DNA from: Vitrella brassicaformis CCMP3155
Taxonomy: Eukaryota > Protista > Chromerida
Length of the DNA stretch: 64,000 nucleotides
Assembly (NCBI GenBank): GCA_001179505.1
Contig: CDMY01000098.1
Coordinates: forward strand, 127,295 to 191,294
Direction: 5' to 3'
In this document: positions 41,062 through 48,191 of the stretch, one piece after another
Layout: every line of letters begins with the position of its first letter
Position numbering within the stretch: position 1 is the stretch's first letter
Notes under the pieces: generated by a model
Seen by the model: only the letters and a program-made list of their open reading frames with translations
Database searches by the model: none
Told to the model about the DNA's origin: nothing
Program-made: the position numbers and the translations under genes

Positions 41062-42262
41062 CTGACTGCCTGACGAGCGGCATCCGGGCGTCCCGTCTCG
41101 TCTCCCTCTGTCTCTCTGGCTCTCTCTGTGTGTCGTCAGTCCCACACTCATTCGGTAGTCACCTTAGATGTACCATTAGCAAGGGGTGGGTGTGGGTGTG
41201 GGGGTCGGTGTGTGGGTGGGCAGGATGGATGGATGTGATGGCGGCTTTTAAGAGAGGGAGAGAGGGGGATGTGTGGGCGGACGATGGTGGGGGGACGGCG
41301 GTGGGTGAGGTGAGATGGTGGGTGGATTGAAGACACCTGAGTGACACGATGGATGGATGGATGGATGTCGCACTCGCTTCGCTTCTTTTTGTTGACTGCA
41401 TTGTTGAATGTTGTCGCCTCCAGAAGCCCGCCCTCACTCAGTCAGCTGATTGTATCTATATTTATGAGGTAGTGTGTTTGTGGTATGTGTATGGTGTGCT
41501 CTTCCTCTGCTCGAGCGCTCGCTCAGTGGCTGTGCACTGAGCGAACCGCTTGAGATGAGGTTGTGCACCACACGCACACACTACACAGACACACACACAC
41601 ACACACACACAATGGCAATGGAAAACATCGACACACTCGACGGCTCACTGACGGCGATTGATTATTTCATCGCCGTGTTCATTTCTTGGACACCCCACAA
41701 ACCAAACCCACTTGGATGGATGGATGGCTAGATGGCCGGCTGGAGGGATGGTTAACTGAGTGGGTACCGGTCTGGGGCGTGCACGTGTGTGTATGCCTGT
41801 GGTGCGATAGAGGCGACTGGCTCACCTAGTGGCAGGCAGGCACGTTCCCAGTGGCAGGCATTCAGGCAGGCAGGCAGCTTGACGTGACTTAAGTCCCCAT
41901 GCATGTGGATCTCTCTGTGAGCTTACGTGTGTGTGTCTCTCTCTGCCTCTCTGTCTGTCGGTGTGCTGACGAATCAATCCCTGCTGTTTAACCCATGGAC
42001 ACACACACACGCCCTGCACCCTGCACACTGCACTGCCGGCCCCCCAATCCAAGCCGCAGCCCCACACAGACAGACACACCAGGTTGACTGACACGTGAGA
42101 TCATTGATCATCTTTGGGCGGCCAGATCGGATCGGCCTGCCTTTTCAAAAACAGCACTGTGTCGGTCGTTGAGGGGAAAACAAAAACCTTAAAAAAACTC
42201 GGAGTTCTTCTCGGGTGGATGGAAAAGTGCTGCTGTCGGTAGTGGGTGCCGCTGCCCGGCAC

Positions 42263-43535
42263 TCACTTCTTGACTGCATTGCACCCCCCCACACACCCAC
42301 GCAGAGAGACAACAAGTACACCAAGTTGGTTGGTGCTATTTCTATGTCTCTCTCTCTCTCTCTCTGTCTCTCTGCACCCACCTTTTTTGTAGCATTTGGG
42401 GCCCTTGCCTTTGGCGCTATAGCAGCACTTGAGCAGCTGCAGACAGACAGACAACAGCAGCACAGACACCAAGCACATCACATGCATATGCGTCTCACCT
42501 CACCCACACTCATCCCCATTCATTGTCACCCATTGTCAATGATCAGTGGTCACTCACTTTGCAGGCGAACTGGCCGGTGCCCTTATTGCCGCAGCGCTTC
42601 TTCTTCTTGACCGGCACGTTCTTGCAGGTGCCTACACACACACACAAACACACACACACAAAACACCGAGAGAGAGACACAAGCCATCCATCCAGCCATC
42701 CATCCATCCACGAACGGTTCGGTGGGAGTCTTTGTGCACCTTTTTTCGGCGGAGCGGTCATGCGCTTGAACTGCACCTTGGGCTTGACGGGGACGGGCTT
42801 GCGGCCCTTGATAATTTTCATCGCGTTGATGATCTTCTTCTCGCCCTGAGAGACACATATAATACACAGACAGACAGGCACACAGAGGGAGGGGGGAAAG
42901 GCTGGCTGGCTCGCTGGCTGCCATCTCTCATCTCTCTCTGTGTGCTGTGTTGTGTTATGTTATGTTATGTGTGTGAGGGTGCTTGCCTTAAGTGATGTGA
43001 TGCGCAGCTTGAGGGGCGGCTTGATGAGGTTCTTGGGCCACTTGCCGGGGATCTGGCTCGTCTTGATCTGACATGCAGGCATACACGCATCGCATGTACG
43101 TGTCTCGCCTGTCCCGTTTGTTTGAGTCTCTCTCTCTCTCTCTCTCTGTGTGGGTGGGTGGGTGGGTGGGTGAGGAGGCGGCGGCGCCTTCCTTGTCCTA
43201 GGCACCTGGAAGAACCCGGCTTTCCATTTGAGGTTGAACCACTTCTTGGCGTTGCGGTGCCAGTACCTGACCGACGGCACACACACATCCACAACATCCA
43301 CACACACATTCAACTCTCTCTCTCTCTCTCGAGTCGCTCGTGTCTCCCCGACTCACTCAGTTTTGATGGCCGGCATGGGCATGTTCCGCGGCTGCACGCC
43401 GATGTAGTGCACGCTAGACGCGTCGTCAAATATGATCTGCACACCCGCCTTGCCGGGGTTGCAATCCTGCGCACGCACAATCGCCCACACCGCACGGAAA
43501 GGCAGTCCGAGCAAAATGGACAAATGGATCTCTGT

Positions 43536-43566
<31 letters not shown>

Positions 43567-44930
43567 GGGGGGNNNNNNNNNNNNNNNNNNNNNNNNNNNN
43601 NNNNNNNNNNNNNNNNNNNNNNNNNNNNNNNNNNNNNNNNNNNNNNNNNNNNNNNNNNNNNNNNNNNNNNNNNNNNNNNNNNNNNNNNNNNNNNNNNNNN
43701 NNNNNNNNNNNNNNNNNNNNNNNNNNNNNNNNNNNNNNNNNNNNNNNNNNNNNNNNNNNNNNNNNNNNNNNNNNNNNNNNNNNNNNNNNNNNNNNNNNNN
43801 NNNNNNNNNNNNNNNNNNNNNNNNNNNNNNNNNNNNNNNNNNNNNNNNNNNNNNNNNNNNNNNNNNNNNNNNGGGGGGGGAGGGCACGCACCACTGCTCT
43901 CCACCAGGTCTTGAAGAGGCCCTTCTGGTTATAGGGCTTCACAGACACGTCCAGCTGGTTCTTGTAGTAGCAGTCAGCACAGCTGACACACACACAGAGA
44001 TGGATTCAGGCTCCATCCATCCAGGCATGGCTCAGCTTAGCTTGGTGTGGCTTACGCATTGTTGACGAAGAGTCTGAGCACTTTGCCTTTGGGCGGGTAC
44101 TCCTTCTTGTTGGGGCCGGGCACGCCGCCCTTGGGATTCGTGTGCGTCGCTATCGCCTGCACACACACATGACATGGATGGATGGGATGGGGTGCATGCC
44201 ATGCCGTGCTGTCACCACACAAACAAAACAACCAAAGGGACACAGGCATGCACCTCACTCAACTCAACTCACCTCGATACACATGCCGCAAGTCTTGCCC
44301 TGGAGTGTCAGCCAACACACACACACACACGGCCGTGGATGAGATGGATTTTGCTGCCGGCAAGCCAAAGCCGAAGCCATGTGCCCGTCTATCCTCTCTC
44401 CCTCTTACGTTGGCGAATGTGTTGCCGCCGACGTTGGGCAGGGCCACGGAGCCCCACACGCCGTTCTTCCCCGAAGGGGGCTGATGAATGAACGGATGGA
44501 CGCAATGCATGCATGCCAGCGAATGACAACGGGGTGGTCTCTTCAAAGCTTTGTCCGGATCTCTCTCTCTCGTGTGCCCTTTGATGCACCGGTGTGTACC
44601 TCAGGGAACATATGACAAGTCCCACGGGCATCTGAACACACGGAGGCATTGAACACAACACACATCCCCCACAGAAAGATGGGCGTTGTCCATCCATCCA
44701 TCCGTCCATCCATACGCACTTTTGGTGAGGGGGTGGTAGTGGCTGATGCTGCCCAGTCTCACCCCCTTGTACAGCGACTTGGCCTTCTGAACGTCCTTCT
44801 GCCCCTCAACTGCCCACACACCACACACCGTCAGCCGAAGCCCTTTCTGCCCTTTTCTCGCCACTCCCATGTGTTATTTCTCACCGAGGGAGCCGATGAA
44901 GGCCACTGTTACCAGGATAGAGAGCCCCAT
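42263..44930 (-). CDS. Secreted expansin-like protein (DPBB + CBM63) with a C-terminal trefoil(P-type)-like domain
   Basis: Signal MGLSILVTVAFIGSLG. Domain 1: HYHPLTKNARGTC, GKTCGMCIE, LFVNNACADC, NQLDVS, WRAVDC. Domain 2: IIFDDASSVHYIGVQPRN, WFNLKWKAGFF, PLKLRITSLKGEKKI, KVQF. Tail: C-x10-CG-x8-C-x4-CC-x9-CY. Confidence 0.8.
43573..43872. other. Assembly gap (300 N)
   Basis: Run of N with poly-G on both sides. It lies in an intron of the expansin gene; WRAV|DCNPG splices across it without a missing exon. Confidence 0.99.
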
Positions 44931-44992
44931 GACCAAAATGCCCTCCACGAGGAGCCTCTTGATGATTGTAAACGGATCTACCTTGAGGCGTC

Positions 44993-46703
44993 ATGATCTT
45001 TCTTGTTTTCGTCGTCGCGTCGCTCGTGGGAGCATTGGGGACGTCCCTACGCCACATGAGGCTTCAGCAGGAGCCGAATCAGCCGATGACCCATCCTGGG
45101 CCCATGCCGTCTGGTGAGATCTGAAACAGGATCTGAACAAAATGGGAGATCCATCGGTAGATCTGAGTGTGTGGGGATGCGTGTGGTTCAGGAGACCCCA
45201 TGTGCAAGAGCGGCATTGTCAGCAAGGACCTCGCCGTCTGCTGCAGACCTGAATGGTGCGCAGCGCATGAACCTTCCAAAGAAAAAGCTTAAGACGGAGG
45301 AGAGGTCCTTGGGTGTGTTGTGTGTTGTGCTGTTGTGCTGTTGTCGTCGTGCAGCTCCGTTTGCTCTGACTATGAGGACTGCAAGGTCGCAAAGTGACTG
45401 ACCAGCCATGCATCTCGCAATGTGTGTGCTGCACTGCACTGCAGGCGAGCCCCAATGTCCCCGCCCACTGCTGCCCGGCGCTCATCGTCAAAGGTGCGTG
45501 TGTCCGCCTCATGCATGGCTGCGCGAGAATAGCAGGTGGGTGCATGTCGATGCGTGGCTGCAGCTATGGAGTCGTGTGATGCCACGCATCCGCCGTGTGT
45601 CTTGTCGGAGACATTCAAGAGTAAGTGGGGGGGGGGCTGCCTGCCTGCCTGTCTGTCTGTCTGTCTGTTTGTGTGTGTGTGTGTGTGTGTGCATCGCTAT
45701 GTGTGACGTATGCAGCGAGTGGGCAGGAGTTCCCTGTGGGCGTCAACGACACGTCAGCCGAATGCAACTCGGTCGAGAGGAACGGTCAGCGTGTCTGTCG
45801 TCGGCACATTCACATACGTACTGAATGTGTAATGATGGTTGGTTGATGCATTAGAGAACTCTCGTCAGGCTGCCGCTGCCGCAAAGGGAACGGTCGGCCC
45901 CACACCAACCAAACAGAGACATAAGGGATTCTTTCACTTGGATGGTTGCAGGTGTCTGGCAAGGCCATCGGAGCTGCCAACGCCGCCGACGTGAAGACGG
46001 GACTGATCATGCCATAGCTATGTGTCTCACTCTCTCTGTCTATGCAATGCAGGGGCTGACCGACTACGTCATGAAGAACGCGCCGAACAGTGAGCAGTCG
46101 ACAGAGGCACAGGCACACCGAGCCGACGCGCAAATGGCGGTGTGGAGAGAGAGAGAGGGAGGGAGGGAGGGAGAGAGAGAGGGGGATAAGCCAGGTCGCG
46201 AGGGCATTCCTTTGTTGCCTGTTCTGTTTATGCAGGCTGGCGTGGCTGCACAGCAGGCCCTCGACCCCACCAAGACAGCCCAAGACATACAGCCAAACAC
46301 GTACGCAGCCACGCACACACACACACAGAGAGAAAGAGAGAGAGGGACAACATCGATCACTGGAGCATGTGGTGTGGTGTGCGGCAGGGACCATGCCGTG
46401 AGTGCGCGTGATGCGGTGCGGGCCATCGCTGAGGGCATCGCCGCCGCCAAGACGCAGACGTATGACACACAGGCGCCACATGCCCCCAGTGTGTCGCCAG
46501 CATGACGCCAGCCAGGGTGGACAGACAAGTGGATAGACCATATGGTTTGGTGTGTGGACTGACGGACGATTGATCGCATGTGTGTGTGATGTCAAAATTT
46601 CGATGCAATGTATTGCAATGGTCTGCATCATGATGTACTCAGATTCGTCCACAGTCCACCCCTAATCCACCTAATCCATCCATCCATCCACCCATCACCA
46701 TAA
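44993..46703 (+). CDS. Secreted Cys-rich + Ala-rich hypothetical protein
   Basis: Signal MIFLVFVVASLVGALG; module GDPMCKSGIVSKDLAVCCRPECSVCSDYEDCKASPNVPAHCCPALIVK; Ala-rich helical C-half (AGVAAQQALDPTKTAQ, AVRAIAEGIAAAKTQ). The 3' end is uncertain (46450-46700). Confidence 0.65.
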
Positions 46704-46907
46704 ATACATCACCCCAATGTGCCTAGGCCACAGAACGCATAGATCCACCCGCCCCGCCCCGCCAGCGGCACACAGACACACACACTCACACTCACAAACA
46801 CACTTGTACAGAAAAAGGGCGTCGATGCACTGAGTGCATCGCGCCCACCCGTCCACCGCATCATGTGATCGTCAGACACATCCTCCCTCTCCATTCGTCA
46901 AGCCACG

Positions 46908-48191
46908 TTAGACAGTTGCGAGGGCTCTCTGGAAGTACTGGTTCTTGAGCATGCCTGCACACACACACACACACACACACAGGTGTGAATCTAATCTCAC
47001 ACTCCATCCCTCTCCCTCTGCTGTGCAGTGCAGTGCAGTGCTCACCCTTGTACATCTCCACGAATTGTTCCTTCTTGCCCATGGTCTCTTGCACACTCTT
47101 GACCGTCAGCATCTTCTTGTACCACGCCAGAAAGGCCCGGGACCCCTTCAGCAGCTCCTCCCAGCCAACCTTCTTGAAGGCCCCGTGTGTGGCCGCCGCA
47201 CGCTCCACAAACGGGAAAAGGGCGATGTCGGCCAACGTCATCTTGTCGCCGACGAACCAGCTCGACTTGGAGGCGTTGGCCTTGAGCATCATCTCGAGGA
47301 AGGCGATCTCATCCATCAGTTTCTGCTTGAGCATTGCCTCTTTCTTGGGCTTGTTGCAGCTGAGGTAGAGGTAGAAGGCCTTGACGAAGGCGTCGACTCG
47401 CTGCATGACGATGCGCATCCTGGCCCGCTGCTGCAGGTCTGCCGGCATGAGAGAGCTGCAACCAACACAGACCCGGTGCATTCAAACATGCACGCACTCA
47501 CGCGCACATTGTGTGGTCACTGTGGTGTCACATTTCACCTCTGGAATGTCTCAGCGAGGTACTCGTTGCACACATTCGACTCGTATACGACATCATCGAA
47601 GTACTGGACCACAGGCACCTTGCCTGCAACACACACAGACACACATGCACACACACAGACACATAGAGAGCGCCGGACAGGACGTATGCGTGTGGCCACA
47701 TCGCCCCTTTCGCGCACGCACCATTTGGGTTCATCTGTTTGAACCATGCCTCCTTGTTGTCCTTGCCAAGCACCACATCCTTGTGCTCGTACCTGAGGGA
47801 GGAGCAAAGGCAAACCACATCTATCCACACTCACACACATGCAGCCAGCAATCACGCTTACGGCACGCCGAGCTCCTTGAGCACTATCCACGTTCTCTGC
47901 GCATACGGACACCCTGCACACACACACACATCCATCCATCCATCCATTCACAGACCTCCCCAGGCACCATCAGATAGATCTGTTACGTCCGTTCGTGTAG
48001 AACTTGAGCTGCGGCAGGCTCTTCAGCTCTCGCTGGTCACTGTTGCTCTCCACCGCAGCTGCAGGGGCAGGGGCAGCCACGGTTGCTGGCGGTTTCAACG
48101 CCGCTGCTGCTGGCTGAGAGCGCCTTCCGATGGCGTCGCAAGCTATGATGAGCACGGAAATGACCACCAATGAAGCAAACCCACCCATCAT
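46908..48191 (-). CDS. Omega/lambda-type glutathione S-transferase with a signal peptide and transit-like leader
   Basis: KFYTNGRCPYAQRTWIVLKELG; NPNGKVPV; VYESNVCNEYL; WFVGDKMTLADIALFPFVER. Leader MMGGFASLVVISVLIIAC is followed by an Ala/Pro-rich spacer. Confidence 0.9.

What the first reader, a model, noticed from the sequence alone, without database searches (positions are those of the whole stretch)
42263..44930. Expansin-like protein fused to a basic trefoil-like domain
Seen in sequence, after hand-splicing: signal peptide, DPBB domain (CGMCIE; QLDVS with the conserved expansin Asp of the HFDLS-type motif; W..V.C), CBM63-like domain, then ...KKGTCKNVPVKKKKRCGNKGTGQFACKLLKCCYSAKGKGPKCYKKVKK* (exons 42558-42631 and 42382-42436). 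Its Cys spacing C-x10-C-x9-C-x4-CC-x9-C closely matches trefoil factors (C-x9-C-x9-C-x4-CC-x10-C, with CG and a G..P.C[FY] ending). Established knowledge: expansins loosen polysaccharide walls, and trefoil domains are glycan/mucin-binding. I know of no described expansin-trefoil fusion. The whole protein is extremely Lys-rich. Inference: a polyanionic-glycan-targeted wall-loosening protein, for example for sporangium wall rupture or host/mucus interaction.
Basis: partly seen in the sequence, partly recalled or inferred. Interest (0 to 1): 0.75.

Follow-up and report, generated by a model that had tools for sequence, protein, structure and literature searches.

The report
Basic expansin–trefoil fusion protein of Vitrella
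A 14-exon gene of the coral-associated alga Vitrella brassicaformis encodes a secreted, extremely lysine-rich cell-wall-loosening (expansin-type) protein with a small trefoil-type cysteine knot at its end, a domain pairing confined so far to five genes of this alga and not described in the papers I could search.

Summary
On the minus strand, 14 exons (44930 to 42263) give a 318-aa protein identical to a public Vitrella brassicaformis model, P0001, named only "P-type domain-containing protein". The N gap lies in intron 7, and nothing coding is missing.

- **Expansin part (residues ~25-265):** it is a genuine two-domain expansin. A family profile hits solved expansins at E 1e-32. The AlphaFold model (pLDDT 89) matches them at Z 17-20. 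NCBIfam EXLX1 hits P0001 at E 6e-9. Pfam DPBB_1 and Expansin_C do not hit.
- **Trefoil part (residues 275-314):** it passes Pfam Trefoil (26.4 bits, cut-off 21). However, both sugar-contacting residues of mammalian trefoil factors are replaced, so mucin-type binding is unlikely.
- **Family:** four paralogs in the same genome carry the same fusion and share intron positions, so the fusion is old. No other organism in a 1.8-billion-protein search has it.
- **This copy:** it is the basic one (net about +51) and has no anchor.
- **Closest outside relative:** an intronless, trefoil-less copy on an AT-rich, virus-like metagenome contig.

This scan already followed up a paralog on other DNA (s1-221697) with the same reading. 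I rate it a new variant of a known kind, of moderate interest. Its function is inferred, not shown.

The parts
44885..44930 (-). Exon 1: start codon and most of the signal peptide (residues 1-15; predicted cleavage after G18)
   Evidence: The hydrophobic core LSILVTVAFIGSL is followed by V-E-G. The cleavage site is inferred, since no signal-peptide predictor was available.
44720..44809 (-). Exon 2: end of signal peptide and start of expansin domain 1 (residues 16-45, the G-S-I-S-H-Y stretch aligning to GxATxY of expansins)
44600..44631 (-). Exon 3 (residues 46-56, with C51)
44409..44480 (-). Exon 4 (residues 57-80)
44273..44299 (-). Exon 5 (residues 81-89, the C84-G-M-C87-I-E motif)
   Evidence: C84, G85 and C87 are nearly invariant in the family.
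44056..44156 (-). Exon 6 (residues 90-123)
43892..43982 (-). Exon 7: end of domain 1 (residues 123-153). It holds C124, C127, D134 (equivalent of BsEXLX1 D82) and W150.
43467..43891 (-). Intron 7, which contains the assembly gap 43573-43872 flanked by poly-C and (CA)n. Its true length is unknown.
   Evidence: The exons on either side are in frame and collinear with homologs.
43357..43466 (-). Exon 8: start of domain 2 (CBM63-like; residues 154-190). H173 and Y174 sit at the positions of BsEXLX1 W125 and W126.
43206..43266 (-). Exon 9 (residues 190-210)
42987..43067 (-). Exon 10 (residues 211-237). It ends with a GC donor (AAG|GCAAGC). The intron position after residue 237 is shared by all five paralogs.
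42740..42845 (-). Exon 11: end of domain 2 and the Lys/Pro-rich linker (residues 238-273; linker 241-273 has 11 K+R and 0 D+E)
42558..42631 (-). Exon 12: first half of the trefoil module (residues 273-297, Cys1-Cys3)
   Evidence: (Trefoil 16.4 bits on this exon alone)
42382..42436 (-). Exon 13: second half of the trefoil module (residues 298-316: CC-Y ... G-P-K-C-Y)
42263..42273 (-). Exon 14: last three residues (the V316 codon straddles the intron; V-K-K) and the TGA stop. Intron 13 is 108 nt, in frame and stop-free, so retaining it would reach the same stop.

Best explanation
This is a nuclear, intron-rich gene of the chromerid alga Vitrella brassicaformis. It encodes a secreted, non-anchored expansin.

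Shown:
- The protein has a two-domain expansin body: a double-psi beta-barrel domain that keeps the Asp essential in bacterial EXLX1 (D134), followed by a CBM63-like beta-sandwich.
- After the body come a Lys/Pro-rich linker and a C-terminal trefoil (P-type) six-Cys module.
- The fusion is ancestral to a five-gene Vitrella family.

Inferred:
- The protein is secreted into the alga's own, probably cellulosic, wall. There the expansin body loosens non-covalent polysaccharide contacts without hydrolysis, during cell or sporangium enlargement or daughter-cell release.
- The very high positive charge (about +51), concentrated in the linker and trefoil module, holds it on acidic wall polymers.
- The trefoil module acts as an accessory targeting or stabilising knot. 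It does not act as a mucin lectin of the mammalian type, because both sugar-contact residues are replaced.
For: - Gene model: it equals the public protein P0001.
- Expansin, sequence level: the family profile A1 matches solved expansins (9ms5 2.5e-32; EXLX1 2bh0/3d30 4.5e-32; 4jcw 3e-23; maize EXPB1 2.5e-12), covering both domains. NCBIfam expansin_EXLX1 hits P0001 itself at E 6.2e-9.
- Expansin, fold level: the AF2 model has pLDDT 88.9 and pTM 0.87. The Foldseek top 12 are all expansins. VIA-align gives Z 20.2 with 193 residues at 2.6 A, and Z 17-19 for four more expansins. The ESM Atlas structure neighbours are all expansin clusters.
- Key residues: D134, C84, C87, C124, C127, W150 and C155 are conserved in at least 90% of 33 relatives.
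- Trefoil: Pfam 26.4 bits against a 21-bit cut-off. Paralogs hit at the same place at 24-30 bits. A stand-alone model of a paralog's module has TFF1, PSP and TFF3 as its top three Foldseek hits. Four of 13 VIA rows are trefoil domains.
- Fusion is real and old: in two paralogs, domain 2 and the trefoil lie in one exon. An MMETSP transcript (P0007) spans domain 2, trefoil and tail of one paralog. P0001 and P0004 share seven intron positions, including all three around and inside the trefoil module.
- Wall substrate: the wall of the sister chromerid Chromera is mainly cellulose (PMC9293442).
- Charge.
Against: - No transcript of this particular paralog is in the protein collection (its cluster has one member), so use of exons 12-14 is not shown directly.
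- Pfam DPBB_1 and Expansin_C do not hit P0001, and the NCBIfam score of 35 bits is far below the 100-bit cut-off.
- The cellulose-binding aromatic platform of EXLX1 (W125, W126, Y157) is only partly kept: H173 and Y174, with the third position ambiguous.
- The composition of the Vitrella wall has not been analysed.
- The trefoil fold evidence is statistically weak (Foldseek E 1.4-3.2; Z 2-2.8) and comes from a paralog's module.
- No activity data exist.
Confidence: 0.6

Rival explanations
1. The protein is aimed outward, at a partner's surface such as coral mucus, other algae or bacteria. In this reading the trefoil module works as a lectin for foreign glycans and the expansin body as an adhesion or penetration aid.
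For: Vitrella was isolated from coral (PMC9293442). Mammalian trefoil factors are mucin lectins (PMC7221086). Microbial expansins often serve interactions with walled hosts (10.1101/637728). This paralog lacks the membrane anchor seen in P0035 and the C27 gene, so it would be released.
Against: Both sugar-contact residues of trefoil factors are replaced (R285, K311), whereas the canonical Vitrella trefoils keep them. Corals have no cellulose wall for the expansin body to act on. There is no expression or localisation evidence.
Confidence: 0.15
2. It is a defensive, antimicrobial-type polycation. The highly cationic, disulfide-knotted C-terminus and the barwin/kiwellin-like barrel would act against microbes or bind polyanions non-specifically, and wall loosening would not be its role.
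For: The net charge is +51, and the linker and module carry 27 K+R with no acidic residue. DPBB relatives include defence proteins such as kiwellin, barwin-like proteins and a papain inhibitor, at Z 8-9.5.
Against: The full two-domain expansin match (Z 17-20) is far better than any single-domain defence protein. The expansin Asp and domain 2 are conserved. Acidic paralogs share the same architecture, so the charge is a variable feature of the family.
Confidence: 0.1
3. The fusion is an annotation artefact for this locus. Exons 12-14 would belong to a separate small gene or be non-coding, and the real protein would end after domain 2, as in the trefoil-less relative P0003.
For: No transcript evidence was found for this paralog. 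Its closest relative, P0003, ends right after domain 2. Exon 14 is only 11 nt.
Against: The phases fit across all junctions. Exon 11 has no stop before its donor. P0004 shares the three intron positions 273, 297 and 316. Paralogs have the junction in one exon, and one is transcribed as a fusion. The six Cys are all intact.
Confidence: 0.07

Closest known systems
Bacterial/microbial expansins of the EXLX1 type (Bacillus subtilis YoaJ/EXLX1, PDB 2BH0/3D30; Streptomyces Ss_EXLX1 9MS5; Clavibacter 4JCW)
   Same: Both have the tandem DPBB plus CBM63-like fold (Z 19-20, about 190 residues aligned). The profile match covers both domains. The Asp equivalent to D82 is conserved as D134. The overall character is basic.
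   Different: This protein is eukaryotic, with 13 introns and a signal peptide. It has six Cys in the expansin body, some at positions like the plant CGxC motif, where EXLX1 has none. W125 and W126 are replaced by H173 and Y174. It adds a Lys-rich linker and a trefoil module. It scores only 35 bits against the 100-bit NCBIfam cut-off.
Expansins fused to carbohydrate-active modules (swollenin CBM1-expansin; CBM2-, GH5- and CBM32-expansin fusions; Chase et al., bioRxiv 10.1101/637728)
   Same: An expansin body is extended by an extra small module that is expected to target it to a polysaccharide. That paper lists Vitrella as the only alveolate with EXLX homologs.
   Different: The partner here is a P-type trefoil domain at the C-terminus. 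It is not a CAZy CBM or GH, and it is not among the fusions catalogued in that paper.
Mammalian trefoil factors TFF1-3 and the P-type domains of GH31 alpha-glucosidases (GAA, MGAM)
   Same: The six-Cys spacing and the CC-aromatic and P-x-C-aromatic motifs are shared. Pfam PF00088 scores above its cut-off. For a paralog's module, TFF1, TFF2 and TFF3 are the best Foldseek hits, and GAA and MGAM P-domains appear among the few VIA hits. As in GH31 enzymes, the domain is attached to a carbohydrate-active protein.
   Different: The sugar-contacting Asp/Asn and Trp are replaced by R285 and K311. The domain is strongly basic and is fused to an expansin.
Vitrella paralogs P0035 (C625), the C27 gene (public model P0002), P0004 (C368) and P0005 (C77)
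   Same: They have the same expansin-trefoil architecture and share intron positions. One was already followed up in this scan (s1-221697).
   Different: P0035 and the C27 gene are acidic and end in a hydrophobic anchor-like tail. P0004 and P0005 have long C-terminal extensions. The window's gene is the most basic, ends right after the trefoil and has no anchor.

Membership tests
Expansin (two-domain, microbial EXLX type) | Tandem fold: N-terminal six-stranded double-psi beta-barrel followed by a CBM63-type beta-sandwich | tested here: met
   The AF2 model has pLDDT 88.9. The Foldseek top 12 are all expansins, with TM by target 0.63-0.78. VIA-align gives Z 20.2, 19.3, 19.3, 17.4 and 17.0, with 190-199 residues at 2.6-3.1 A.
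Expansin (two-domain, microbial EXLX type) | Sequence-profile membership: Pfam DPBB_1 (PF03330) and Expansin_C (PF01357) above gathering score, or NCBIfam NF041144 above its cut-off | tested here: not met
   Pfam gives no hit even at E<=10 on P0001 or on single exons, nor in a six-frame scan of the genome. NF041144 hits at E 6.2e-9 but scores 35.4 bits against a 100-bit cut-off. Homology is nevertheless significant through the family profile (E 1e-32 to solved expansins).
Expansin (two-domain, microbial EXLX type) | Conserved domain-1 Asp (BsEXLX1 D82; Asp of the HFD motif) needed for wall loosening | tested here: met
   D134 aligns with D82 of 2bh0 and is conserved in at least 90% of 33 relatives.
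Expansin (two-domain, microbial EXLX type) | Planar aromatic platform on domain 2 (BsEXLX1 W125, W126, Y157) for cellulose binding | tested here: inconclusive
   By the alignment, W125 corresponds to H173 and W126 to Y174. The third position falls in a gapped region (W204, F208 or F209 are candidates). No coordinates were available to check the surface.
Expansin (two-domain, microbial EXLX type) | Non-hydrolytic wall creep or weakening activity | not testable with these tools
   This needs recombinant protein and a creep or filter-paper assay.
Trefoil (P-type) domain, Pfam PF00088 | Six Cys with spacing C-x(9-10)-C-x9-C-x4-CC-x(9-10)-C | tested here: met
   The Cys are C275, C286, C296, C301, C302 and C312, giving x10, x9, x4, x0, x9. 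They align column for column with six canonical Vitrella trefoils.
Trefoil (P-type) domain, Pfam PF00088 | Profile score above Pfam gathering threshold | tested here: met
   The score is 26.4 bits against 21, at E 6.1e-6, over residues 275-314 and profile positions 1-42 of 43. It is the only Pfam family hit. The UniRef name is 'P-type domain-containing protein'.
Trefoil (P-type) domain, Pfam PF00088 | Three-loop fold with a short helix and beta-hairpin, similar to solved TFF structures | tested here: inconclusive
   In the full model the module has pLDDT 77-88, with a helix at 293-298 and strands before and after. A stand-alone model of the C27 paralog's module (pLDDT 71) gives TFF1 6v1d, PSP 1pos and TFF3 6v1c as its top three Foldseek hits, but at E 1.4-3.2. 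VIA gives Z 2.0-2.8 to GAA, TFF3 and MGAM P-domains. The result is consistent but not significant, and it was not obtained on this protein's own module.
Trefoil (P-type) domain, Pfam PF00088 | Disulfide connectivity 1-5, 2-4, 3-6 | not testable with these tools
   The structure tool returns no coordinates.
Trefoil factor lectins (TFF1-3 function) | Sugar-contacting Asp/Asn before Cys2 and Trp in P-W-C (PMC7221086) | tested here: not met
   These positions are R285 and K311 in P0001. They are also replaced in all expansin-linked paralogs, but kept in canonical Vitrella trefoils (Asp in 5 of 6, Trp in 6 of 6).

The most novel reading that the evidence does not exclude
The expansin-linked trefoil module may be a new kind of wall-polymer binding module, in effect an undescribed carbohydrate-binding family derived from the P-domain. 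It would retarget expansins to a non-cellulosic, acidic wall polymer of chromerids, with the basic soluble copy and the acidic anchored copies dividing the labour. In addition, a giant virus of a chromerid-like alga may have captured a spliced copy of this very paralog, without the trefoil, to breach its host's wall.
Probability: 0.2. Interest if true: 0.65.

Novelty: new variant of a known kind. Interest (0 to 1): 0.42.

Why it matters
Expansins are the only known proteins that loosen cellulosic walls without cutting them. Their fusions to other modules are used to infer how they are targeted. This gene adds a partner not catalogued before: a trefoil/P-type domain, best known from animal mucus proteins.

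The fusion occurs in an alga that sits next to the apicomplexan parasites. It is present in a five-gene family with sharply different charges and anchoring. That gives a concrete handle on how chromerid walls and sporangia are remodelled, and on what trefoil domains do outside animals.

It is not a new principle. Both domains are known, expansins were already reported in Vitrella, and public automatic annotation flags the P-type domain.

Tried and rejected
- Pfam on each exon by reference gave only exon 12 hitting Trefoil, and nothing for the expansin exons.
- Six-frame scans of the whole genome with PF03330 and PF01357 found nothing, probably because the exons are too short.
- phmmer of P0001 against PDB sequences gave only noise, namely chlorophyll-binding proteins at E 0.3.
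- A scan of IMG/VR viral contigs for relatives found none. The viral nature of the P0003 contig therefore rests on its features only, with no hallmark gene among 24 genes.
- The supplements of the expansin survey paper hold no Vitrella accession.
- I considered recent transfer of this gene from an AT-rich virus and rejected it. GC3 is 0.83, there are 13 introns, and seven intron positions are shared with paralog P0004.
- I considered a missing exon in the N gap and rejected it.
- The hand-joined spliced protein was sent to no search or folding tool. Searches were made exon by exon by reference, and then with the public protein id that a tool returned. Exons were joined only inside scripts, to check identity with that public protein and to count codons.
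Full report
**Observation**

Reading the minus strand of 42000-45300 and checking splice sites and phases in a script gives a 14-exon gene. The exons, as high-low window coordinates, are:

| Exon | Coordinates |
|---|---|
| 1 | 44930-44885 |
| 2 | 44809-44720 |
| 3 | 44631-44600 |
| 4 | 44480-44409 |
| 5 | 44299-44273 |
| 6 | 44156-44056 |
| 7 | 43982-43892 |
| 8 | 43466-43357 |
| 9 | 43266-43206 |
| 10 | 43067-42987 |
| 11 | 42845-42740 |
| 12 | 42631-42558 |
| 13 | 42436-42382 |
| 14 | 42273-42263 |

All acceptors are AG. Twelve donors are GT, and the donor after exon 10 is GC. The total is 957 nt.

A word search with an open frame around exon 7, given by reference, returned one public protein, P0001. 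It is 318 aa, from Vitrella brassicaformis CCMP3155, and UniRef names it 'P-type domain-containing protein'. Its sequence is identical to the translation of the 14 exons.

The assembly matches what I recall of the published Vitrella genome: 72.7 Mb in 1064 contigs, with the window at C98:127295-191294.

Lys is 16.7%, pI is 10.2 and net charge is about +51.

**How the spliced model was handled**

The hand-joined protein was sent to no search or folding tool. Full-length analyses used the public protein id that one search returned. Exons were joined only inside scripts, to compare with that protein and to count codons.

**The gap**

The 300 N (43573-43872) sit in a poly-C/(CA)n tract inside intron 7. 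Exon 7 ends in phase 0 at V153 and exon 8 begins with D154. The stretch W-R-A-V-D-C across this junction is nearly invariant in relatives; W150 and C155 are conserved in at least 90%. It aligns without any gap to paralogs and to EXLX1. In paralog P0004 it lies within a single exon, whose introns map to positions 147 and 177. Nothing coding is missing, and only the intron length is unknown.

**Expansin part**

Pfam does not recognise it. There is no DPBB_1 or Expansin_C hit on P0001 at E<=10, on single exons or in six-frame scans. Other evidence is strong.

- An exhaustive HMMER search of 1.84 billion representatives found 33 relatives. Some of them carry DPBB_1 (best 3e-12), EXPB1_D1 and Expansin_C (best 2e-8).
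- A profile of these 33 sequences hits solved expansins over both domains: 9ms5 at 2.5e-32, B. subtilis EXLX1 at 4.5e-32, Clavibacter 4jcw at 3e-23, maize EXPB1 at 2.5e-12 and Phl p 1 at 6e-11.
- NCBIfam expansin_EXLX1 hits P0001 itself at E 6.2e-9. At 35 bits this is well below the 100-bit cut-off.
- An AlphaFold2 model built on that alignment has pLDDT 88.9 and pTM 0.87.
- The Foldseek top 12 PDB matches are all expansins.
- VIA-align against 48,161 chains gives Z 20.2, 19.3, 19.3, 17.4 and 17.0 for five expansins. The next best is Z 9.6, for single-domain relatives.
- The ESM Atlas's own model gives the same neighbours.

D134 aligns with the essential D82 of EXLX1. The cellulose-platform tryptophans W125 and W126 correspond to H173 and Y174, and the third aromatic position is ambiguous.

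**Trefoil part**

P0001 residues 275-314 match Pfam Trefoil over 42 of 43 profile positions at 26.4 bits, against a 21-bit cut-off. Exon 12 alone gives 16.4 bits.

Vitrella has many unambiguous trefoil domains: 39 six-frame matches, 28 of them over the cut-off, with the best at 54 bits and several in tandem arrays. In an alignment with six of them, the six Cys and the Pro before Cys6 are invariant.

The two side chains that contact sugar in TFF3 are the Asp (Asn in TFF1 and TFF2) before Cys2 and the Trp of P-W-C. Mutating either abolishes mucin binding (PMC7221086). The canonical Vitrella trefoils keep them. In every expansin-linked module they are replaced; here they are R285 and K311.

The module could not be folded alone for this gene, because an intron splits it. 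I therefore folded the single-exon module of the C27 paralog, which gave pLDDT 71. Only four PDB chains matched at E<=10. The top three are TFF1, porcine spasmolytic polypeptide and TFF3, with TM 0.5-0.6 but E 1.4-3.2. In the wide VIA search, 4 of the 13 chains with Z>=2 are P-type domains (GAA, TFF3, two MGAM). This is consistent with a trefoil fold but is weak evidence.

**Family and age of the fusion**

A six-frame search of the genome with P0001 finds four more loci: C27, C368, C625 and C77. At each of them a Trefoil match follows the expansin exons. They correspond to public proteins P0002, P0004, P0035 and P0005. A sixth expansin, P0006 (945 aa), has no trefoil but a PAN-like stretch.

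- Pfam confirms Trefoil in P0004, P0005 and P0035.
- The public model P0002 is cut inside the module. The C27 DNA encodes a complete six-Cys trefoil followed by a hydrophobic tail, in the same exon as the end of domain 2.
- A transcriptome ORF (P0007, MMETSP) covers domain 2, trefoil and tail of P0035. The fusion is therefore transcribed in at least one paralog.
- Intron positions mapped onto P0001 show position 237 shared by all five genes. Seven positions are shared by P0001 and P0004: 45/46, 89/90, 210, 237, 273, 297 and 316. They include the phase-1 introns that bracket the trefoil module and the phase-0 intron inside it.

The fusion therefore predates the paralog radiation. The window's gene is an old resident, with GC3 of 0.83. 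No protein outside Vitrella among the 33 relatives carries Trefoil.

**What is special about this copy**

Charge differs sharply among the relatives:

| Protein | Net charge at pH 7 |
|---|---|
| P0001 | +51 |
| P0003 | +44 |
| P0004 | +29 |
| P0002 | -13 |
| P0005 | -17 |
| P0035 | -9 |
| P0006 | -52 |

P0001 ends five residues after the trefoil and has no hydrophobic tail. P0035 and the C27 gene end in one.

**Mechanism (inferred)**

The wall of the sister chromerid Chromera is about 80% glucose, mostly 4-linked, and stains with calcofluor white (PMC9293442). Vitrella's wall has not been analysed.

The simplest reading is an endogenous wall-loosening protein released into the wall. There it would be held by electrostatic binding of its Lys-rich linker and basic knot to acidic wall components. 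The anchored acidic paralogs would act at the membrane face. A role toward coral mucus is less likely because the lectin residues are lost. A defensive polycation role cannot be excluded.

**Side finding**

The closest relative outside Vitrella is P0003/P0034 (269-271 aa, 45-46% identity, E 2e-57). It has no trefoil and is equally Lys-rich.

It lies on an 18.2-kb metagenome contig (ENA ERZ893782). The contig is 35% GC, intronless and tightly packed, with 24 genes, almost all without a Pfam family. It carries a tandem paralog pair, a NUDIX gene and a GIY-YIG-like/AP2 gene. It looks like a piece of a giant-virus genome, but no hallmark gene was seen and no IMG/VR relative was found.

In a careful ML tree it is sister to P0001 (support 100/99), inside the Vitrella clade. 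The AU test rejects a Vitrella-only clade at p 0.001. Two caveats apply: I named the group after seeing the tree, and P0001 and P0003 share an odd composition.

Because P0001 shares introns with more distant paralogs, capture of a spliced host copy is the more likely direction. Capture of expansin genes by NCLDV has a precedent in Klebsormidium (PMC5294986). The best feature-based ESM Atlas neighbour is an all-viral cluster of 279-aa proteins.

**Literature and novelty**

The survey of microbial expansins (bioRxiv 10.1101/637728) lists Vitrella as the only alveolate with EXLX homologs. It catalogues fusions to CBM1, CBM2, GH5 and CBM32 only.

Full-text searches for expansin+trefoil, Vitrella+expansin and Vitrella+trefoil found no description of this fusion. 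Public automatic annotation flags the P-type domain. This scan already followed up the C625 paralog with the same reading (s1-221697).

**Surroundings**

No coding signal overlaps on the plus strand. The nearest recognisable neighbour is a glutathione S-transferase exon at 46864-47481, on the minus strand. I see no functional link.

Noticed in passing
L019/L020 (ENA ERZ893782:k147_820274), gene at L019:9001-9810: An intronless, trefoil-less, Lys-rich copy of this expansin (P0003, 45-46% identity) sits on a 35% GC, ORFan-dense, virus-like 18-kb metagenome contig. In the tree it nests inside the Vitrella paralogs as sister to the window's gene (support 100/99; AU p 0.001).
   Followed up: partly
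G000:C27:185426-185881 (L021:2627-3082): The public model P0002 is cut inside the trefoil. The DNA encodes a complete six-Cys trefoil, an acidic Ser/Gly stalk and a hydrophobic tail, in one exon continuous with the end of expansin domain 2.
   Followed up: yes
G000: C395:192163-192609, C249:55167-57280, C336:235142-235664, C319:77710-78769, C791:160862-161221, C729:3993-4277 and others: The trefoil (P-type) domain is expanded in this alga. There are 39 six-frame matches, 28 of them above the Pfam cut-off, and several form tandem arrays of two or three canonical domains that keep the D-C and P-W-C lectin residues. I found no paper on this.
   Followed up: partly
window 42985-42986 (donor of intron 10): This is a GC-AG intron (AAG|GCAAGC) in an otherwise GT-AG gene. 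The intron position after residue 237 is shared by all five paralogs.
   Followed up: partly
window 42274-42381 and 42632-42739: Introns 13 and 11 are each 108 nt, in frame and free of stops. Retaining either would insert 36 residues without breaking the frame. Retention of intron 13 reaches the same stop codon.
   Followed up: no
P0035 (G000:C625), alignment A2 columns ~190-205: The public model of the anchored paralog lacks the stretch that holds the second Cys pair and the conserved Asp (D134 equivalent). This is either a skipped exon in the annotation or a real loss of the key residue.
   Followed up: no
window 46864-47481 (minus strand): An open frame matches glutathione S-transferase C-terminal domains (E 4e-10). 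It is the nearest recognisable neighbour upstream of the expansin gene.
   Followed up: no
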